In this document: positions 372 through 9,883 of the stretch, in pieces
How positions within the stretch are numbered: position 1 is the stretch's first letter
How the letters are laid out: every line of letters begins with the position of its first letter
Made by a program: the position numbers and the translations under genes
Notes under the pieces: generated by a model
What the model was told of the DNA's origin: nothing
Databases searched by the model: none
The model's input: only the letters and a program-made list of their open reading frames with translations
Source of the DNA: Octopus sinensis
Taxonomy: Eukaryota
Direction: 5' to 3'
Assembly: GCF_006345805.1 (NCBI RefSeq)
Contig: NW_021827387.1
Coordinates: forward strand, 1-10,204
Length of the DNA stretch: 10,204 nt

Positions 372-822
<451 letters not shown>

Positions 823-1187
823 TCTCTGGTGTCTGTCCGCGTCTATCTTTCTATATACCTGTACCTACACCCATCACATCACACACAACATAACACAAAT
901 ACGCACACAGACATACATTTTTTTCACCTTGATTGCGCAAGCCCTATTCATAAACAGCTCTAAAGCTAATTAAACAATTAAAAAAACACAAATTTCTCTC
1001 CCAGATAGATTACAGCTCAGAATGCCAGGTGGTTTACCTATTACCACGCCCACTCCCTCCACGCCATCACCACCAACAACAAACAAAAAATCAACAAAGG
1101 TATTACTAAAACACTGCAAATACGCCAGCCATCGCCTGGATATTACTTCAAACAATAAAGCCTTCATTAACAAAACATTCACTATAC

Positions 1188-1886
1188 GCCGGAGTGGATA
1201 GGGCAGGGACTCGCGGTCGTAGGATCACGGTTTCGATTCCCAGACCGGGCGTTGTGAGTGTTTATTGAGCGAAAACACCTAAAAGCTCCACGAGGCTCCG
1301 GCAGGGGATTGTGGTGATCCCTGCTGTACTCTTTCACCACAACTTTCTCCCACTCTTACTTCCTGTTTCTGTTGTACCTGTATTTCAAAGGGCCGACCTT
1401 GTCACTCTCTGTGTCACGCCGAATATCCCCGAGAACTACGTTAAGGGTACACGTGTCTGTGGAGTGCTCAGCCACTTACACGTTAATTTCACGAGCAGGC
1501 TGTTCCGTTGATTCGGATCAGCTGGGACCCTCATCGTCGTAACCGATGGAGTGCTCCTGCAAGGGGTGGTGGTGAACCCTGCTGTACTCTTTCACCACAA
1601 CTTTCTCCCACTCTTACTTCCTGTTTCTGTTGTACCTGTATTTCAAGGGGCCGGCCTTGTCACTCTCTGTGTCACGCCGAATATCCCCGAGAACTACGTT
1701 AAGGGTACACGTGTCTGTGGAGTGCTCAGTCACTTACACGTTAATTTCACGAGCAGGCTGTTCCGTTGATCGGATCAACCGGAACCCTCATCGTCGTAAC
1801 CGACGGAGTGCTCCTGCAGGGGGTGGTGGTGAACCCTGCTGTACTCTTTCACCACAACTTTCTCTCACTCTTACTTCCTGTTTCTG
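1188..1886 (+). mobile_element. tRNA-derived SINE (family 1) with a tandemly repeated 3' module; degraded 5' A box; 3' end cut by (TATG)n
   Basis: B-box-like GGTTTCGATTCC at 1229-1240. The head aligns to the reverse complement of 7841-7949, and the body aligns to 6551-7840. Confidence 0.85.
1300..1886 (+). repeat. 258-bp module x 2.3 (1300-1557, 1558-1814, partial 1815-1886)
   Basis: Junction GGAGTGCTCC|TGCA(A/G)GGGG recurs at 1557/1558 and 1814/1815. Periods are 258 and 257 bp. Confidence 0.95.
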
Positions 1887-2076
1887 AATGAATGTATGTA
1901 TGTATGTATGTATGTATGTATGTATGTATGTATGTATGTATGTACGTATGCATGTATGTATAAATGAATGTAAGTATATATGTATGTGTGTATTATGTAT
2001 GTGTGTGTGAATGTATGTATGTATGTTTCTATATATGTATGTATGTATGTGTGTATGTGTGTATGTATGTATGTGT
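1887..2076. repeat. compound (TATG)n/(TG)n microsatellite
   Basis: Direct reading. Confidence 0.95.
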
Positions 2077-2186
2077 GTACCGTAAAAGTTCATACATACG
2101 TCTATATACACACAAACACAAGAAAAAACCATGGTTAAAGATAGTGTTTGTGTGTATATAGACGTATGTATGAACTTTTACGGTAC
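2077..2186. repeat. 110-bp palindrome with perfect 43-bp arms; possible MITE
   Basis: 2077-2119 GTACCGTAAAAGTTCATACATACGTCTATATACACACAAACAC is the exact reverse complement of 2144-2186. The 24-bp spacer contains the centred palindrome AACCATGGTT. Confidence 0.9.
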
Positions 2187-2353
2187 GCATGTGTGTGTGT
2201 ATGAGGTTGTATATGTATGCGTATATATTTGGCGAAAAATGCGAGTGAAGATGTATACGTTTCCATAGTGACGTATAAGTACGCACGTGGGTTTTCGCGC
2301 GCACAATTATAATACAGTAATTTCCCTTTATATAACGGTATCTTTTCATAGCG

Positions 2354-2530
2354 TTTTTCAAATGGCCAGATAACCGAAGACATGGTGTTGTGGATTTCCA
2401 CTTCGGCATCTGAAACTCAGTTTTATCTTGACTATTGAGTAAATGTAACATATTATTTTATAGATAAATTTCCTCTATTTACATAATATTGAAGTCTCTT
2501 TCTTTCTTTCTTTTGTTATCTTACCGTTTT
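2354..2530 (-). mobile_element. foldback/MITE-like repeat arm (type R)
   Basis: Imperfect reverse complement of 2588-2755 and same-orientation homolog of 6417-6528. The inner end GTTATCTTACCGTTTT pairs exactly with AAAACGGTAAGATAAC. Confidence 0.7.
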
Positions 2531-2535
2531 TACGA

Positions 2536-2569
<34 letters not shown>

Positions 2570-2580
2570 GTGTATATATA
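2536..2580. repeat. (TA)n microsatellite between the inverted arms
   Basis: Direct reading. Confidence 0.95.
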
Positions 2581-2587
2581 TTGATGG

Positions 2588-2755
2588 AAAACGGTAAGAT
2601 AACAAAAGAAAGAAAGAGACCTCGATATTATGTAAATAGAGGAATTTATCTGTAAAAGTAATATATAACAATTGTTCGGTAGCCAAGATAAAACTCCGAG
2701 TATCGGATGCTGAGGTGGAAAACCACGCTGTCATCTCTTCCGGCCATCGGAAAAA
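2588..2755 (+). mobile_element. foldback/MITE-like repeat arm (type L)
   Basis: 2668-2740 matches 6283-6355 at 72/73 positions. Inverted relative to 2354-2530. Confidence 0.7.
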
Positions 2756-2758
2756 TCA

Positions 2759-5700
2759 TAAAAAATAGGGAATTTCATAGAAAAAAATCACCTTTTTGAT
2801 GTAAATAATTTTTGGTTGTTAACATGGTCCGATCTGAATTTTATCTTCTACGGAATGAAGAGCAAGCCTTCTTCTATCATACTCTCAATTTTGGTCAACT
2901 TGTACCGCAGGGTCTCGGAGGAGATAGTGTTGGTTGAAGGCTACCAAACCTGCCACACACACACAGACAACTTCAGCTTTATAAATAGTAAAAAACAGAT
3001 TTTCATAGAAAAAAAGCACGTTTTTGATGTAAATAATTTTTGGTTGTTAACATGGTCCGATCTGAATTTTATCTTCTACGGAATGAAGAGCAAGCCTTCT
3101 TCTATCATACTCTCAATTTTGGTCAACTTGTACCGCAGGGTCTCGGAGGAGATAGTGTTGGTTGAAGGCTACCAAACCTGCCACACACACAGAGACAACT
3201 TCAGCTTTATAAATAGTAAAAAACAGATTTTCATAGAAAAAAAGCACGTTTTTGATGTAAATAATTTTTGGTGTTAACATGGTCCGATCTGAATTTTATC
3301 TTCTACGGAATGAAGAGCAAGCCTTCTTCTATCATACTCTCAATTTTGGTCAACTTGTACCGCAGGGTCTCGGAGGAGATAGTGTTGGTTGAAGGCTACC
3401 AAACCTGCCACACACACACAGACAGACAACTTCAGCTTTATAAATAGTAAAAAATAGAGATTTTCATAGAAAAAAAGCACGTTTTTGATGTAAATAATTT
3501 TTGGTGTTAACATGGTCCGATCTGAATTTTATCTCTCTACGGAATGAAGAGCAGCCTTCTCTATCATACTCTCATTTTGGTCAACTTGTACCGCAGGGTC
3601 TCGGAGGAGATAGTGTTGGTTGAAGGCTACCAAACCTGCCACACACACACAGACAACTTCAGCTTTATAAATAGTAAAAAATAGAGATTTTCATAGAAAA
3701 AAAGCACGTTTTTGATGTAAATAATTTTTGGTGTTAACATGGTCCGATCTGAATTTTATCTTCTACGGAATGAAGAGCAAGCCTTCTTCTATCATACTCT
3801 CAATTTTGGTCAACTTGCGCCGCAGGGTCTCGGAGGAGACAGTGTTAGTTGAAGGCTACCAAACCTGCCACACACACACAGACAACTTCAGCTTTATAAA
3901 TAGTAAAAAATAGAGATTTTCATAGAAAAAAAGCACGTTTTTGATGTAAATAATTTTTGGTGTTAACATGGTCCGATCTGAATTTTATCTTCTACGGAAT
4001 GAAGAGCAAGCCTTCTTCTATCATACTCTCAATTTTGGTCAACTTGTACCGCAGGGTCTCGGAGGAGATAGTGTTGGTTGAAGGCTACCAAACCTGCCAC
4101 ACACACACAGACAACTTCAGCTTTATAAATAGTAAAAAATAGAGATTTTCATAGAAAAAAAGCACGTTTTTGATGTAAATAATTTTTGGTGTTAACATGG
4201 TCCGATCTGAATTTTATCTTCTACGGAATGAAGAGCAAGCCTTCTTCTATCATACTCTCAATTTTGGTCAACTTGTACCGCAAGGTCTCGGAGGAGATAG
4301 TGTTGGTTGAAGGCTACCAAACCTGCCACACACACACAGACAACTTCAGCTTTATAAATAGTAGAAAATAGAGATTTTCATAGAAAAAAAGCACGTTTTT
4401 GATGTAAATAATTTTTGGTGTTAACATGGTCCGATCTGAATTTTATCTTCTACGGAATGAAGAGCAAGCCTTCTTCTATCATACACTCAATTTTGGTCAA
4501 CTTGTACCGCAGGGTCTCGGAGGAGATAGTGTTGGTTGAAGGCTACCAAACCTGCCACACACACACAGACAACTTCAGCTTTATAAATAGTAAAAAATAG
4601 AGATTTTCATAGAAAAAAAGCACGTTTTTGATGTAAATAATTTTTGGTGTTAACATGGTCCGATCTGAATTTTATCTTCTACGGAATGAAGAGCAAGCCT
4701 TCTTCTATCATACTCTCAATTTTGGTCAACTGGTACCGCAGGGTCTCGGAGGAGATAGTGTTGGTTGAAGGCTACCAAACCTGCCACACACACACAGACA
4801 ACTTCAGCTTTATATATAGTAAAAAATAGAGATTTTCATAGAAAAAAAGCACGTTTTTGATGTAAATAATTTTTGGTGTTAACATGGTCCGATCTGAATT
4901 TTATCTTCTACGGAATGAAGAGCAAGCCTTCTTCTATCATACTCTCAATTTTGGTCAACTTGTACCGCAGGGTCTCGGAGGAGATAGTGTTGGTTGAAGG
5001 CTAACATGGTCCGCTTCGAATTTTATTTTCTACGGAATGAAGAGCAAGCCTTCTTCTATCATACTCTCAATTTTGGTCAACTTGCGCCGCAGGGTCTCGG
5101 AGGAGACAGTGTTAGTTGAAGGCTACCAAACCTGCCACACACACACAGACAACTTCAGCTTTATAAATAGTAAAAAATAGAGATTTTCATAGAAAAAAAG
5201 CACGTTTTTGATGTAAATAATTTTTGGTGTTAACATGGTCCGATCTGAATTTTATCTTCTACGGAATGAAGAGCAAGCCTTCTTCTATCATACTCTCAAT
5301 TTTGTCAACTTGTACCGCAGGGTCTCGAAGGAGATAGTGTTGGTTGAAGGCTACCAAACCTGCCACACACACACAGACAACTTCAGCTTTATAAAAGTAA
5401 AAAATAGAGATTTTCATAGAAAAAAAGCACGTTTTGATTTTAAATAATTTTTGTTGTTAACATGGACCGATCTGAATTTTATCTTTCTACGATGAAGAGC
5501 AAGCCTTCTTCTATCATACTCTCAATTTTGGTCAACTTGTACCGCAGGGTCTCGGAGGAGATAGTGTTGGTTGAAGGCTACCAAACCTGCCACACACACC
5601 ACACAGACAACTTCAGCTTTATAAATAGTAAAAAATAGAGATTTTCATAGAAAAAAAGCACTTTTTGATGTAAATAATTTTTGTTGTTAACATGGACCGA

Positions 5701-5856
5701 TCTGAATTTTATCTTCTACGGAATGAAGAGCAAGCCTTCTTCTATCATACTCTCAATTTTGGTCAACTTGCGCCGCAGGGTCTCGGAGGAGATAGTGTTA
5801 GTTGAAGGCTACCAAACCTGCCACACACACAGACAACCTCAGCTTTATATATATAG
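2759..5856 (+). repeat. tandem array of a ~229-bp monomer: 12 full units plus one 351-bp fused 1.5-unit; Helentron/HINE-like
   Basis: Unit starts (TAAAAAA) at 2759, 2989, 3217, 3448, 3675, 3904, 4133, 4362, 4591, 4820, 5171, 5398, 5629. Each unit carries a short (CA)n and ends in CAGCTTTATA(A/T)ATAG, with a variant end in the 5171 unit. Confidence 0.97.
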
Positions 5857-5942
5857 GTATATCTGTAAATATATATATATATATATATATATTTATATGT
5901 ATGTAAATATATATATATATATAGGTATATCTGTAAATATAT
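5845..5942. repeat. (TA)n tract containing a duplicated ATATAGGTATATCTGTAAATATAT block (5851-5874, 5919-5942)
   Basis: Direct reading; period 68 bp. Confidence 0.85.
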
Positions 5943-6254
5943 GGAAGGCGCATGGCTCAGTGGTTAGAGCGTTGAGCTTACGATCGTGAGGTTGTGAGCT
6001 CGAATCCCGGACCGGGCTGCGTGTTGTGTTCTTGAGCAAGGCACTTTATTTCACGTTGCTCCAGTTCACTCAGCTGTAGAAATGAGTTGCGACGTCACGG
6101 GTGCCAAGCTGTATCGACCTTTGTCTTTCCCTTGGATAACACTGGTGGCGTGGAGAGGGGAGGCCGGTATGCATGGGCGACTACTGGTCTTCCATAAAAA
6201 CAACCTTGCCCAGACTTGTGCCTCAGAGGGTAACTCTCTAGGGGGTCTTTACCC
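5943..6254 (+). mobile_element. tRNA-derived CORE-type SINE (family 2)
   Basis: A box TGGCTCAGTGG at 5953-5963. Degenerate B box AGCTCGAATCC at 5997-6007. CORE-like segment TGTGTTCTTGAGCAAGGCACTT...CAGCTGTAGAAATGAG at about 6025-6086. T6 at 6255-6260. Candidate TSD TATATCTGTAAAT at 5926-5938 and 6260-6272. Confidence 0.85.
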
Positions 6255-6260
6255 TTTTTT

Positions 6261-6528
6261 ATATCTGTAAATGTTATATGTGACAATTGTTCGGTAGCCA
6301 TGATAAAACTCCGAGTATCGGATGCTGAGGTGGAAAACCACGCTGTCATCTCTTCAGTAATCCGGCCATCTCATACACTTGTAAAAGAAAGCTTTCCATC
6401 CCACACACTTACGGCATTTTTCCGATGGCCAGATAACTGTAGAGATGGCGGCGTGGACCTCCACCTCGGCATCCGAAACTCAGAGTTTTATTATGGCTAC
6501 TGAATAATTGTCATATATTACTTTTACA
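6261..6528. mobile_element. foldback/MITE-like element: L arm (6261-6370), 46-bp spacer, R arm (6417-6528)
   Basis: The two arms are imperfect reverse complements of about 110 bp and are homologous to 2645-2755 and 2354-2465. Confidence 0.75.
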
Positions 6529-6550
6529 CACACATATATATGGATGGAAG

Positions 6551-7840
6551 CACTCCGTCGGTTACGACGACGAGGGTTCCGGTTGATCCGAATCAACGGA
6601 CCAGCCTGCTCGTGAAATTAACGTGTAAGTGGCTGAGCACTCCACAGACACGTGTACCCTTAACGTAGTTCTCGGGGATATTCAGCGTGTCACAGAGAGT
6701 GACAAGGCCGGCCCCTTGAAATACAGGTACAACAGAAACAGGAAGTAAGAGTGAGAGAAAGTTGTGGTGAAAGAGTACAGCAGGGGTCACCACCACTCCC
6801 TGCCGGAGCACTCCGTCGGTTACGACGATGAGGGTTCCAGTTGATCCGAATCAACGGAACAGCCTGCTCGTGAAATTAACGTGTAAGTGGCTGAGCACTC
6901 CACAGACACGTGTACCCTTAACGTAGTTCTCGGGGATATTCAGCGTGACACAGAGAGTGACAAGGCCGGCCCTTTGAAATACAGGTACAACAGAAACAGG
7001 AAGTAAGAGTGAGAGAAAGTTGTGGTGAAAGAGTAAAGCAGGGTTCACCACCACCCCCTGCAGGAGCACTCCGTCGGTTACGACGACGAGGGTTCCGGTT
7101 GATCCGAATCAACGGAACAGCCTGCTCGTGAAATTAACGTGTAAGTGGCTGAGCACTCCACAGACACGTGTACCCTTAACGTAGTTCTCGGGGATATTCA
7201 GCGTGACACAGAGAGTGACAAGGACGGCCCCTTGAAATACAGGTACAACAGAAACAGGAAGTAAGAGTGAGAGAAAGTTGTGGTGAAAGAGTACAGCAGG
7301 GATCACCACCACCCCTTACAGGAGCACTCCGTCGGTTACGACGATGAGGATCCCAGCTGATCCGAATCAACGGAACAGCCTGCTCGTGAAATTAACGTGT
7401 AAGTGGCTGAGCACTCCACAGACACGTGTACCCTTAACGTAGTTCTCGGGGATATTCAGCGTGACACAGGGAGTGACAAGGCCGACCCTTTGAAATACAG
7501 GTACAACAGAAACAGGAAGTAAGAGTGAGAGAAAGTTGTGATGAAAGAGTACAGCAGGGATCACCACCACCCCTTGCAGGAGCACTCCGTCGGTTACGAC
7601 GATGAGGATCCCAGCTGATCCGAATCAACGGAACAGCCTGCTCATGAAATTAACGTGTAAGTGGCTGAGCACTCCACAGACACGTGTACCCTTAACGTAG
7701 TTCTCGGGGATATTCAGCGTGTCACAGGGAGTGACAAGGCCGACCCTTTGAAATACAGGTACAACAGAAACAGGAAGTAAGAGTGAGAGAAAGTTGTGGT
7801 GAAAGAGTACAGCAGGGATCACCACCATCCCCTGCCGGAG
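6551..7840 (-). repeat. 258-bp module x 5
   Basis: CACTCCGTCGGTTACG recurs at 6551, 6809, 7067, 7325 and 7583 (exact 258-bp period). The head begins at 7841. Confidence 0.97.
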
Positions 7841-7894
7841 CCTCGTGGAGCTTTAGGTGTTTTCGCTCAATAAACACTCACAACGCCCGGTCTG

Positions 7895-7949
7895 GGAATC
7901 GAAACCGCGATCCTATGACCGCAAGTCCGCTGCCCTAACCACTGGGCCA
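7895..7949 (-). promoter_or_regulatory. internal RNA polymerase III type-2 promoter (A and B boxes) of the SINE
   Basis: The A box matches TRGCNNAGTGG. The B box is GGTTTCGATTCC. Spacing is tRNA-like. Confidence 0.75.
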
Positions 7950-7980
7950 TTGCGCCTCCACACACACATATATATATATA

Positions 7981-8190: not shown

Positions 8191-8278
8191 AGATATCAGA
8201 AAGCAGAACCAAAATCGAAGTCGATCAACATCAATGGAAATTGCAGCTGTGATACCAGTGCCGGTGACAAGTAAGCGA

Positions 8279-8527
8279 ACCATCCGAACGTGGCCATTGC
8301 CAGCGCCGCCCCGACTGGCCTCCTTGCTTGTGGCACGTAAAAAGCACCATCCGTTCGTGGCCGTTGCCAGCCTCGCCTGGCCCCCGTGCCGGTGGCACGT
8401 AGCACCATCCGTTCGTGGCCGATGCCAGCCTCGCCTGGCCCCGTGCCGATGGCACATAAAAAGCACCATCCGATCGTGGCCGTTTGCCAGACTCGTCTGG
8501 CACCTGTGCGGGTGGCACGTAAAAAGC
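8279..8527 (+). repeat. four ~62-bp GC-rich tandem units in the LINE 3' UTR
   Basis: ACCATCCG starts at 8279, 8346, 8404 and 8465. Unit lengths are 67, 58, 61 and 63 bp. Confidence 0.9.
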
Positions 8528-8679
8528 ACCCACTACACTCACGGAGTGGCTGGCGTTAGGAAGGGCATCCAGCCGTAGAAACATTGCCAGATCAGAATGG
8601 AGCCTGGTGCAGCCTTCTGGCTTCCCAGACCCCAGTTGAACCGTCCAACCCATGCTAGCATGGAAAGCGGACGCTAACC

Positions 8680-8969
<290 letters not shown>

Positions 8970-9496: not shown

Positions 9497-9542
9497 AATT
9501 ATTATTATTATTATTATCATTATTATTATGATTATTTATTCA

Positions 9543-9573
<31 letters not shown>

Positions 9574-9835
9574 TGTTACTATTATTATTATTATTATTAT
9601 TATTATCATCATCATCATTATTATTATTATTATTATCATCATCATCATCCTCATTATTATGATCATTATCATTATTATTATTATGATTATCATCATTATT
9701 ATTATTATCATTATTATTATTATTATCATCATCATCATCATTATTATTATTATTATCATCATCATCATCATCATCATTCTTCTTCTTCTTCTTCTTCTTC
9801 TTATTATTATCATTATCATTATTATCATTATATTA

Positions 9836-9883
<48 letters not shown>
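9497..9883. repeat. compound (ATT)/(ATC)/(TTC) trinucleotide microsatellite
   Basis: Direct reading; (TTC)8 island at 9777-9800. Confidence 0.97.

What the first reader, a model, noticed from the sequence alone, without database searches (positions are those of the whole stretch)
6526..7975. A 1.4-kb SINE with a polymerised 3' module (head + 5 x 258 bp) inside one TSD
Seen: an intact tRNA-like head with A and B boxes, then five exact-period 258-bp modules, the whole bounded by a 16-bp direct repeat. The sense strand has no TTTT over 1418 bp, so Pol III could read through. A second copy in the window is also multimeric. Established knowledge: SINEs are usually under 500 bp and borrow a single LINE-like 3' end for reverse-transcriptase recognition. 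Inference: repeated 3' modules may give several priming or recognition sites, or arise by RT template jumping onto the same RNA. This would be a SINE-to-satellite route, or a long SINE subfamily mobilised as a multimer. Caveat: the TSD is low-complexity, and expansion after insertion is possible.
Basis: partly seen in the sequence, partly recalled or inferred. Interest (0 to 1): 0.7.

Follow-up and report, generated by a model that had tools for sequence, protein, structure and literature searches.

The report
Octopus SINE with five-fold repeated body
This is a small octopus retrotransposon (SINE) whose whole 258-base body has been copied five times in a row behind one tRNA-like head. SINE-to-tandem-repeat conversion of this shape is already described in clams and reptiles, so it is a tidy new example rather than a new phenomenon.

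Summary
On the minus strand there is a 119-nt tRNA-derived head (7959-7841), five indel-free 258-bp modules (7840-6551) and a 9-nt tail. All of this is enclosed by an exact 16-bp direct repeat (6526-6541 / 7960-7975).

A second copy on the plus strand (about 1190-1886) has a 5'-truncated head and 2.3 modules.

Relatives in Octopus bimaculoides and in another cephalopod sample are monomers (head plus one body). The repeated unit is therefore the entire SINE body, including its conserved 3' hairpin.

- The head is degenerate. The A box is exact and the B box has one extra T, but no tRNA is called at default thresholds.
- The TTTT-free stretch is one unit copied five times, and 19% of shuffles of one unit also lack TTTT.
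- Copy B has no TSD or tail, so it does not show independent retroposition.

Junction variants shared between the two copies suggest that a 2-3-module state predates their split. This fits either a multimeric source or a local DNA copy 5 kb away.

The same architecture, TSD-(head, n truncated units, tail)-TSD, was published for blood-clam SINEs in 2024, and SINE-derived satellites were published for squamates in 2023.

Verdict: a new member of a known kind, of modest interest.

The parts
7960..7975 (.). Target-site duplication, copy next to the head (5' side of the element on its sense strand)
   Evidence: Exact 16-mer ACACACACATATATAT, also at 6526-6541; 0 matches in 200 shuffles. It is low-complexity, (AC)4(AT)4.
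7841..7959 (-). 119-nt head: a degenerate tRNA-derived part (about 75 nt) plus a linker, GTGAGTGTTTATTGAGCGAAAACACCTAAAGCTCCACGAGG
   Evidence: A box at head nt 11-21 and B box at nt 54-65. A cloverleaf appears only at the relaxed ARAGORN threshold. No tRNA call at default settings or in Rfam. The head is conserved in copy B and in L001/L010.
7939..7949 (-). A box TGGCCCAGTGG
   Evidence: Exact match to TRGCNNAGTGG.
7895..7906 (-). B-box-like GGTTTCGATTCC
   Evidence: Matches GGTTCGANNCC with one extra T.
7583..7840 (-). Module A1, head-proximal; starts CTCCGGCAGGGGAT and has the 3' variant CAGCTGGGA
   Evidence: It shares diagnostic sites with B1.
7325..7582 (-). Module A2; looks like a hybrid, with a 5' end like the second-module type and a 3' part like A1
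   Evidence: 6 differences from A1. It shares the CTGCAAGGGG junction with A3 and B2, and the A1-specific sites 97/112/232.
7067..7324 (-). Module A3, with the 3' variant CAACCGGAA; closest to B2
   Evidence: 8 differences from B2, against 13 between B1 and B2.
6809..7066 (-). Module A4; junction CTGCAGGGGG, as at B2/B3
   Evidence: 1 difference from B3 over 76 nt.
6551..6808 (-). Module A5, the last one; ends ...CGTCGTAACCGACGGAGTG
6542..6550 (-). 3' terminus and short tail, CTTCCATCC on the sense strand
   Evidence: Monomers L001 and L010 end at the same ...GGAGTGC(T), followed by short TNCA-like repeats.
6526..6541 (.). Target-site duplication, copy next to the tail
   Evidence: The joined flanks still align with a paralogous foldback arm.
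1193..1295 (+). Copy B: head lacking roughly the first 10-16 nt
1296..1886 (+). Copy B modules: B1 1296-1553, B2 1554-1810 (1-nt deletion), B3 1811-1886. B3 is cut at module nt 76 and abuts the (AATG)2(TATG)n microsatellite at 1888-2079.

Best explanation
Element A is one insertion of an octopus-lineage tRNA-derived SINE. The canonical form of this SINE is about 380 nt: a 119-nt head, a 258-nt body and a short tail. In this copy the entire body has been tandemly amplified to five units between the single head and the single tail, inside the original target-site duplication. It is therefore a SINE-derived mini-satellite, or a quasi-pentameric SINE.

The body is bracketed by a short direct repeat: GAG-GCTCC at the head/body border and GAGTGCT(T)CC at the body/tail border. 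I infer that this repeat seeded the first duplication by slippage or unequal exchange. Once two units existed, the number of units changed by homologous unequal exchange in 258-bp register. A2 is such a recombinant.

A state with two or three modules already existed when the lineages of copies A and B separated. Copy B is a both-ends-truncated secondary copy of that state. It most likely arose by a local DNA-level event 5 kb away rather than by a demonstrable retroposition.

Shown: the anatomy, the monomeric relatives, and the junction variants shared by A and B. Inferred: the DNA-level mechanism and the order of events.
For: Anatomy is established.

The basic element is a monomer:
- L001/L002 and L010 carry a head plus one body, 79% identical to this element, ending at GGAGTGC(T) plus a short tail.
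- Residues 9-116 of the O. bimaculoides protein model P0031 translate a head plus one body, followed by unrelated sequence.

The array is real and old rather than an assembly artefact. Modules differ only by substitutions, 6-15 per 258 nt and mostly transitions, with no indels.

A2 combines the junction type of the second module with A1-specific 3' sites, as expected from a single unequal exchange.

Cross-locus relationships:
- B2 is closer to A3 and A4 (8 differences) than to B1 (13).
- B1 is closest to A1.
- The first internal junction reads CTGCAAGGGG in both loci and a later one reads CTGCAGGGGG in both.
- The neighbour-joining tree groups (A1, A2, B1) against (A3, A4, A5, B2).

Tandem amplification of body segments recurs in sister SINE families: L003 has 152 bp x 3.0 behind a tRNA head, and L004 has 57 bp x 5.3.

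The window is very rich in tandem arrays, including a 229-bp satellite and very long microsatellites, so it may be expansion-prone.

The same architecture within one TSD is published for a bivalve (PMC11481361). SINE-derived satellites attributed to unequal recombination are published for squamates (PMC10702118).
Against: - Bootstrap support for the cross-locus grouping is weak (54% and 20-32%), and it rests on about 8 informative sites.
- Nothing in the window separates DNA-level expansion from amplification during reverse transcription, or from transcription of an already multimeric source.
- Both copies in the window (2 of 2) are multimeric, which would also fit a common multimeric subfamily.
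- A5 starts with the head-proximal junction base (CTCCGG...), which simple unequal exchange does not explain.
- No genome-wide census or orthologous locus could be examined.
Confidence: 0.5

Rival explanations
1. A multimeric source gene exists. RNA polymerase III, or read-through Pol II, transcribes the head plus several bodies as one RNA of 0.6-1.4 kb, and the partner LINE inserts it. On this view A and B are independent retropositions of a long SINE subfamily. Each body carries its own 3' recognition hairpin, so reverse transcription can start at any body and change the module number.
For: - A has every retroposition hallmark around the whole array: full head, tail and a 16-bp TSD.
- There is no TTTT on the sense strand until 140 nt past the element.
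- A and B share the module order and the junction variants.
- Modules within A are about as diverged from one another as A is from B, as expected if the array predates insertion.
- Every module ends in the hairpin CGUCG-UAAC-CGACG. It is conserved in related families, with both-sides changes at 4 of 6 predicted pairs.
Against: - B has no TSD and no tail, is cut mid-module, and lies only 5 kb from A in inverted orientation. It is therefore not a demonstrable independent insertion.
- The TTTT-free argument is weak: 19% of shuffles of one unit lack TTTT.
- All three relatives recovered with both ends (L001, L010, P0031) are monomers.
- No ORF spanning a module-module junction exists in the protein collections searched.
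- A TSD around the array is equally expected after in-situ expansion.
Confidence: 0.25
2. The multimer was made during a single integration event. The LINE reverse transcriptase copied a body up to the head/body border, then jumped to the 3' end of the same or another SINE RNA using the GCUCC microhomology. It repeated this several times and copied the head only in the last round.
For: - The unit border coincides with a GAG(G/TG)CTCC direct repeat at the two ends of the body.
- The internal junctions read GCTCCT, like the 3' end plus first tail bases of monomer L010 (GGAATGCTCCTTCA). A trace of tail may therefore be retained at junctions.
- A5 starts with the head-proximal form CTCCGG.
- The body RNA folds with its two ends paired, z = -3.1, with 0 of 200 shuffles folding as well. 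This would bring donor and acceptor sites together.
Against: - Modules made in one event from near-identical RNAs should have been nearly identical at birth, and then differ only by private mutations. Instead they carry variants shared with particular modules of copy B.
- The A2 mosaic looks like homologous exchange between modules that had already diverged.
- End-to-end template jumping normally yields whole-element multimers that include heads. This point rests on established knowledge of R2 and L1 reverse transcriptases and was not tested here.
Confidence: 0.1
3. A and B each inserted as monomers and expanded independently at their own sites.
For: - The flanking microhomology could drive the same breakpoint to form twice.
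- The region is rich in tandem repeats.
Against: - B2 is closer to A3 and A4 than to B1.
- Both loci share the same G-to-T junction base, the same order of CAA then CAG junctions, and the same linked 3' variants CAGCTGGGA versus CAACCGGAA.
Confidence: 0.07
4. The five modules are an assembly over-expansion of a shorter array.
For: The neighbouring 229-bp satellite shows scattered 1-nt indels typical of long-read consensus, so the assembly is not error-free.
Against: - The five modules are each distinct. Across the modules of A and B, 31 columns vary; within A all differences are substitutions, mostly transitions, and there are no indels.
- Some variants are shared with specific modules of copy B. 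An artefact would give identical or randomly noisy units.
Confidence: 0.03

Closest known systems
TSD1-(SINE)n-TSD1 tandem-like arrays of HCD tRNA-SINEs in the blood clam Scapharca broughtonii (Mob DNA 2024, PMC11481361)
   Same: - A mollusc.
- One TSD encloses a first unit with a complete tRNA head, several units lacking the head, and a last unit with the complete tail.
- The authors interpret it as recombination-driven tandem formation.
   Different: - This is a cephalopod with a different SINE family.
- Here the unit excludes the whole 119-nt head and includes the body right up to its 3' terminus. The clam units are truncated in both the head and the tail.
- Arrays of 4-15 units are reported in the clam; here there are 5.0 and 2.3.
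SINE-derived satellites (sSat) of Squam1/2/3 SINEs in squamate reptiles (Mob DNA 2023, PMC10702118)
   Same: - Tandem repeats made of part of a SINE, with terminal units that run on to the SINE terminus.
[quoted passage not shown]
- The same unit structure recurs at several loci.
   Different: - sSat arrays reach up to 1000 units and favour subtelomeres. Here there are five units, and the chromosomal position is unknown.
- Both SINE termini, the tail and the TSD are retained here.
Quasi-dimeric or quasi-oligomeric SINEs (B1 quasi-dimer; CHRS/CHR-2 with a ~20-nt motif repeated more than 10 times; SINEBase, PMC3531059)
   Same: An internal tandem duplication within one SINE that is propagated by retroposition.
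   Different: - Those units are about 20-30 nt and the elements stay within the 75-662 nt range of SINE consensus lengths.
- Here the unit is 258 nt and the element is about 1.42 kb.
- Propagation as a multimer is not shown here.
SVA/LAVA composite retrotransposons with an internal VNTR (hominoids). This comparison rests on established knowledge and was not tested here.
   Same: A non-autonomous, LINE-dependent element whose internal tandem array varies in unit number between copies, giving an element longer than 1 kb.
   Different: - SVA is a Pol II transcript with Alu-like, VNTR and SINE-R parts, 35-50-bp units and a poly(A) tail, mobilised by L1.
- Here the head is tRNA-derived, the unit is the whole body, and there is no poly(A) tail.
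Tandem multimers of full-length SINEs (dimeric Alu; Dip/B1 multimers of up to eight in the jerboa, cited in PMC10702118)
   Same: Head-to-tail arrays of SINE sequence.
   Different: In those arrays every unit keeps its own head. Here there is only one head for five bodies.

Membership tests
tRNA-derived SINE | Internal Pol III promoter: A box (TRGCNNAGTGG) and B box (GGTTCGANNCC) at tRNA-like spacing | tested here: met
   The A box is exact at head nt 11-21. The B box is at nt 54-65 with one extra T.
tRNA-derived SINE | Head recognisably homologous to a tRNA (cloverleaf) | tested here: inconclusive
   ARAGORN at default settings and the Rfam tRNA model give no hit, even at E<=10. A degenerate cloverleaf appears only at a 60% threshold.
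tRNA-derived SINE | Target-site duplication flanking the element | tested here: met
   A 16/16 direct repeat directly abuts the head and the tail. It is low-complexity. The joined flanks align with a paralogous foldback arm.
tRNA-derived SINE | Short simple-repeat tail after a conserved 3' end | tested here: inconclusive
   There are only 9 nt (CTTCCATCC) between the last body and the TSD. The monomers L001 and L010 show similar short TNCA-like ends after GGAGTGC(T).
tRNA-derived SINE | Dispersed, multi-copy, non-coding element of up to about 700 nt | tested here: inconclusive
   Copies or fragments were found in the window (2), in O. bimaculoides protein models (P0001, P0031) and in Logan contigs of another cephalopod. 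The monomer (about 380 nt) is in range. This copy (1,418 nt between the two TSD copies) exceeds the 75-662 nt range of SINEBase. The genome-wide copy number could not be tested.
tRNA-derived SINE | 3' region shared with a partner LINE | not testable with these tools
   No cephalopod LINE sequences were available. Only a conserved 3' hairpin could be shown, with both-sides changes at 4 of 6 pairs.
SINE-derived satellite / tandem-like SINE array | Tandem units that are a defined part of a SINE, with terminal units continuing to the SINE ends | tested here: met
   The unit is the whole body of the monomer, with the head on one side and the tail on the other.
SINE-derived satellite / tandem-like SINE array | The same unit structure at more than one locus | tested here: met
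   Copies A and B have identical unit phase and junctions. Only two loci were seen, 5 kb apart.
SINE-derived satellite / tandem-like SINE array | Long homogenised arrays in heterochromatic or subtelomeric regions | not testable with these tools
   The array has only five units that are 94-98% identical. The chromosomal position of the window is unknown.
Retrotransposition-competent multimeric SINE subfamily | Several independent insertions with different TSDs that share module number and order | tested here: inconclusive
   A qualifies. B lacks a TSD and a tail and is truncated. Module order is shared, but with weak support.
Retrotransposition-competent multimeric SINE subfamily | A full-length multimeric transcript exists | not testable with these tools
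   No RNA data are available for the source species.

The most novel reading that the evidence does not exclude
Octopus genomes may harbour an active long-SINE subfamily in which a single Pol III head drives transcripts of 0.6-1.4 kb carrying two to five complete bodies. Each body would have its own reverse-transcriptase recognition hairpin. Module number would then be reshuffled at every retroposition, by internal initiation or template switching, and arrays would be seeded across the genome as a direct, RNA-mediated SINE-to-satellite pathway.
Probability: 0.2. Interest if true: 0.6.

Novelty: new member of a known kind. Interest (0 to 1): 0.3.

Why it matters
If multi-body copies prove to be common and independently inserted, this would be a clean natural case of an RNA-mediated route from an interspersed repeat to a tandem array. 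It would also show how long a Pol III/LINE-dependent element can become.

As it stands, the finding adds a cephalopod example to a pattern already reported in bivalves and squamates. It identifies the likely seed for the first duplication, a short direct repeat bracketing the body.

It also has a practical use. Repeat annotation of octopus genomes will split such elements into 'SINE' plus 'satellite' unless the monomer is known.

Tried and rejected
- tRNA detection. ARAGORN at default settings and Rfam found nothing, on the whole window and on the 156-nt head. The many miRNA-model hits are microsatellite or palindrome hairpins below gathering score and are irrelevant.
- Collection scans. Exact-pattern scans of metagenome and viral contigs with a 27-mer from the body gave 0 hits.
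- Protein-space route to other genomic copies:
  - The 72-aa body ORF gave one UniRef O. bimaculoides hit with no DNA on record.
  - The junction-spanning 64-aa ORF gave no candidates.
  - A concatenated six-frame query was swamped by low-complexity candidates and returned only P0031.
  - Exact look-up of ten window ORFs found none in the collection.
- The exhaustive HMMER search worked, but every DNA locus it led to comes from one Logan project (SRR11869384-91) whose species I could not identify. P0015 and P0023 in that list are unrelated repetitive proteins.
- Literature. Full-text search for sequence strings of the element gave 0 papers. SINEBase supplementary consensus sequences (OK, OR1, OR2) are not held, and the octopus genome paper is not held. 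I therefore could not test identity with a named octopus SINE.
- The 'SINE' term search in the A. fangsiao paper matched only 'sinensis'.
- A search for a TSD around copy B found none.
- L013 is a fragment truncated at both ends and was uninformative.
- I considered and set aside the CGCCGGAGTG match at the 5' edge of B to the body 3' end (D7). I regard it as chance similarity with the diverged A box.
Full report
**What is there**

TRF finds a 258-bp period at 6549-7841 with 5.0 copies, 96% matches and no indels. It finds the reverse-complement unit at 1295-1886 with 2.3 copies.

Read on the minus strand, the element starts at 7959 with GGAGGCGCAATGGCCCAGTGGTTAGGGCAG.... A 119-nt head (7959-7841) is followed by five modules in exact register:

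| Module | Window coordinates |
|---|---|
| A1 | 7840-7583 |
| A2 | 7582-7325 |
| A3 | 7324-7067 |
| A4 | 7066-6809 |
| A5 | 6808-6551 |

After A5 come nine bases (CTTCCATCC on the sense strand) and then the direct repeat. The 16-mer ACACACACATATATAT sits exactly at 6526-6541 and 7960-7975. Apart from one overlapping near-match it occurs nowhere else in the window, and it did not occur in 200 shuffles.

When the two flanks are joined, the sequence still aligns with a paralogous foldback arm elsewhere in the window (2351-2459 and 2651-2756). The whole block therefore behaves as one insertion.

**The head**

The A box TGGCCCAGTGG is a perfect match to the consensus. The B box GGTTTCGATTCC has one extra T. 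The two boxes start 43 nt apart.

The tRNA cloverleaf is badly eroded:
- ARAGORN at default settings calls nothing.
- The Rfam tRNA model does not match, even at E<=10 on the isolated 156 nt.
- A mismatched cloverleaf appears only at a 60% ARAGORN threshold.

'tRNA-derived' is a fair description. 'Intact' is not.

**The TTTT argument**

The sense strand has no TTTT from upstream of the head to window 6386, which is 140 nt beyond the element. This is a single 377-nt unit seen five times, and 19% of composition-matched shuffles of that unit also lack TTTT. The observation permits Pol III read-through but is not evidence for it.

**What the repeated unit is**

The protein collections provided a way to reach related DNA. 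The 72-aa ORF of a module matches an Octopus bimaculoides UniRef entry (P0001, 85% identity). This places the window in or near the genus Octopus.

An exhaustive HMMER search found 24 ORFs. Every locus I fetched from these hits comes from Logan contigs of one sequencing project (SRR11869384-91), whose species I could not determine.

- L001/L002 and L010 carry copies 79% identical to the head plus A1. Each has one body only, ending at ...CCGACGGAGTGC(T) followed by short TNCA-like repeats.
- Residues 9-116 of an O. bimaculoides dynein heavy-chain model (P0031) translate a head plus one body and then leave the SINE.

The canonical element is therefore a monomer of about 380 nt. The amplified unit in the window is its complete body, not just a 3' module.

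The last 180 nt or so of the body, from GTACCTGTATTTCAAAGGG onwards, are shared by more distant families in the same Logan project (L003, L004, L005, L008, L011, L012). The extreme 3' end forms a hairpin, CGUCG-UAAC-CGACG. In those families it shows both-sides changes at 4 of 6 predicted pairs. This is the kind of 3' structure that stringent LINE reverse transcriptases recognise. That reading is an inference, because no LINE was available to test it.

**How the array probably arose**

The body is bracketed by a short direct repeat...ACGAG-GCTCC-GGCAGG at the head/body border and ...CGGAGTGCT(T)CC-ATCC at the body/tail border. Internal junctions read ...CGGAGTGCTCC-TGCAGG. A 258-bp segment between 8-9-nt direct repeats is a natural substrate for a first duplication by slippage or unequal exchange. 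It would equally suit a microhomology-guided template switch.

After the first duplication, exchange in 258-bp register can change the copy number. A2 shows the signature of this. It carries the junction type of the second module (CTGCAAGGGG), but from about column 97 onwards it carries the private variants of A1 (columns 97, 112, 232). It differs from A1 at only 6 sites.

The modules differ by substitutions only, 6-15 per 258 nt and mostly transitions. This argues against an assembly artefact and for an array that is not recent.

The single-module RNA folds with its two ends paired (-87.1 kcal/mol, z = -3.1, 0 of 200 shuffles folding as well). This could favour either kind of switch, but I give it little weight.

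**Was the multimer mobilised?**

Copy B (1193-1886, plus strand) shares the unit phase and junction sequence of A. The similarities go further:
- B1 shares the head-proximal start (CTCCGGCAGGGGAT) and the 3' variant CAGCTGGGA with A1.
- B2 shares CAACCGGAA and the CTGCAAGGGG junction with A3.
- B3 matches A4, with 1 difference in 76 nt.
- B2 is closer to A3 and A4 (8 differences) than to its neighbour B1 (13).

A neighbour-joining tree rooted with L001 groups (A1, A2, B1) against (A3, A4, A5, B2). Bootstrap support is only 54% and 20-32%.

This makes independent expansion at the two sites unlikely. It suggests that a two- or three-module state predates the split of A and B.

It does not show retroposition of a multimer, for these reasons:
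- B lacks roughly the first 10-16 nt of the head.
- B is cut at nt 76 of its third module by a (TATG)n microsatellite.
- B has no tail and no detectable TSD.
- B lies 5 kb from A in inverted orientation, in a window crowded with tandem arrays and palindromes.

A local DNA-level copy, by templated repair or conversion, explains B at least as well. There are B-specific variants shared by B1 and B2 (columns 54, 124), and A-specific variants shared by A1 and A2. These show that each locus has also evolved on its own.

**Recurrence in relatives**

In the Logan project, L003 is a different family of the same superfamily. It has a tRNA head, three 152-bp body units (83% matches) and then the 3' hairpin. 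L004 has a 57-bp piece of the conserved domain repeated 5.3 times. Tandem amplification of body segments is therefore a recurrent feature of these cephalopod SINEs, with different unit borders each time. This fits a general DNA-level tendency better than a special property of one master gene.

**Comparison with what is known**

- SINEBase gives 75-662 nt (mean 253) for SINE consensus lengths. It recognises quasi-dimeric and quasi-oligomeric SINEs with short internal repeats.
- Vassetzky et al. 2023 describe SINE-derived satellites in squamates. These form a continuum from SINEs with extended internal duplications to arrays of up to 1000 units, with terminal units running to the SINE ends. The authors attribute them to unequal recombination favoured by high SINE copy number.
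- The 2024 bivalve study reports exactly this architecture in the blood clam. [quoted passage not shown]

The octopus element is therefore a new member of a known kind. What is particular here is the following:
- The host is a cephalopod.
- The unit is the entire body, including the putative recognition hairpin.
- The anatomy is very clean, with an exact period, a retained tail and an intact TSD.
- A second nearby copy shares the ordered junction variants.

**Verdict**

| Explanation | Confidence |
|---|---|
| In-situ or DNA-level amplification of a SINE body, with an early multi-module state copied once nearby | 0.5 |
| A truly mobile multimeric subfamily | 0.25 |
| Multimer built by template switching in one integration event | 0.1 |
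| Independent in-situ expansion at each locus | 0.07 |
| Assembly artefact | 0.03 |

A genome-wide census of bodies per head with TSD calling, and the orthologous locus in sister species, would settle the question. Neither was possible with the collections at hand. Interest: 0.3.

Noticed in passing
window 2351-2756, 2759-5853, 6262-6528: A 229-bp satellite of about 13.5 units is bracketed by direct copies, 94.7% identical, of a ~95-nt segment (2647-2740 and 6262-6355). That segment is one arm of a foldback palindrome (2390-2726, 82.7% self-complementary over 346 nt). A second arm pair lies at 6262-6355 and 6414-6528. This looks like a MITE or foldback element carrying an internal satellite, as described for bivalve tandem-repeat-containing MITEs. 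SINE A is inserted at the outer end of the 6414-6528 arm.
   Followed up: partly
window 5941-6260 (+): A second, unrelated tRNA-derived SINE lies directly after a (TA)n tract. Its head is GGAAGGCGCATGGCTCAGTGGTTAGAGC... and it contains a CTTGAGCAAGGCACTTTATTTCACGTTGCTCCAG core. From memory this core resembles the Deu/Nin-type conserved SINE domain; I did not test that.
   Followed up: no
window 2074-2189: A 116-nt near-perfect palindrome (88%) matches a dozen miRNA-precursor models, all well below gathering score. I read it as a generic hairpin, not as evidence of a miRNA.
   Followed up: partly
window 8255-8969 and 9498-9883: Three GC-rich repeats of about 58 nt (8255-8530) are followed by about 150 nt of unique sequence and a (GAT)11(ATT)86 tract. 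This may be another retroposon with a trinucleotide tail. A second long (ATT)n/(ATC)n tract lies at 9498-9883.
   Followed up: no
window 372-827, 1888-2079, 170-300: There are very long microsatellites, (TATC)114 and (ATGT)48, and long C/T homopolymer runs. The window as a whole is unusually rich in tandem repeats, so this may be an expansion-prone region.
   Followed up: no
P0031 (UniRef A0A0L8HIS0_OCTBM), residues 9-116: The N-terminus of an O. bimaculoides dynein heavy-chain gene model is a translated monomer of this SINE, head plus one body with an internal deletion. It is probably an annotation artefact or an exonised SINE.
   Followed up: partly
L003 264-717; L004 350-666: Related SINE families in an unidentified cephalopod sample (SRR11869391) carry their own internal tandem amplifications: 152 bp x 3.0 behind a tRNA head, and 57 bp x 5.3 of the conserved domain.
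   Followed up: partly
window 7583-7840 (-), any module: The 5' ~30 nt and the 3' ~35 nt of each body are complementary, so the body RNA folds as a closed panhandle (z = -3.1). The A1/A2-specific changes (GGGACCC to GGGATCC) increase this complementarity. Its significance is unknown.
   Followed up: partly
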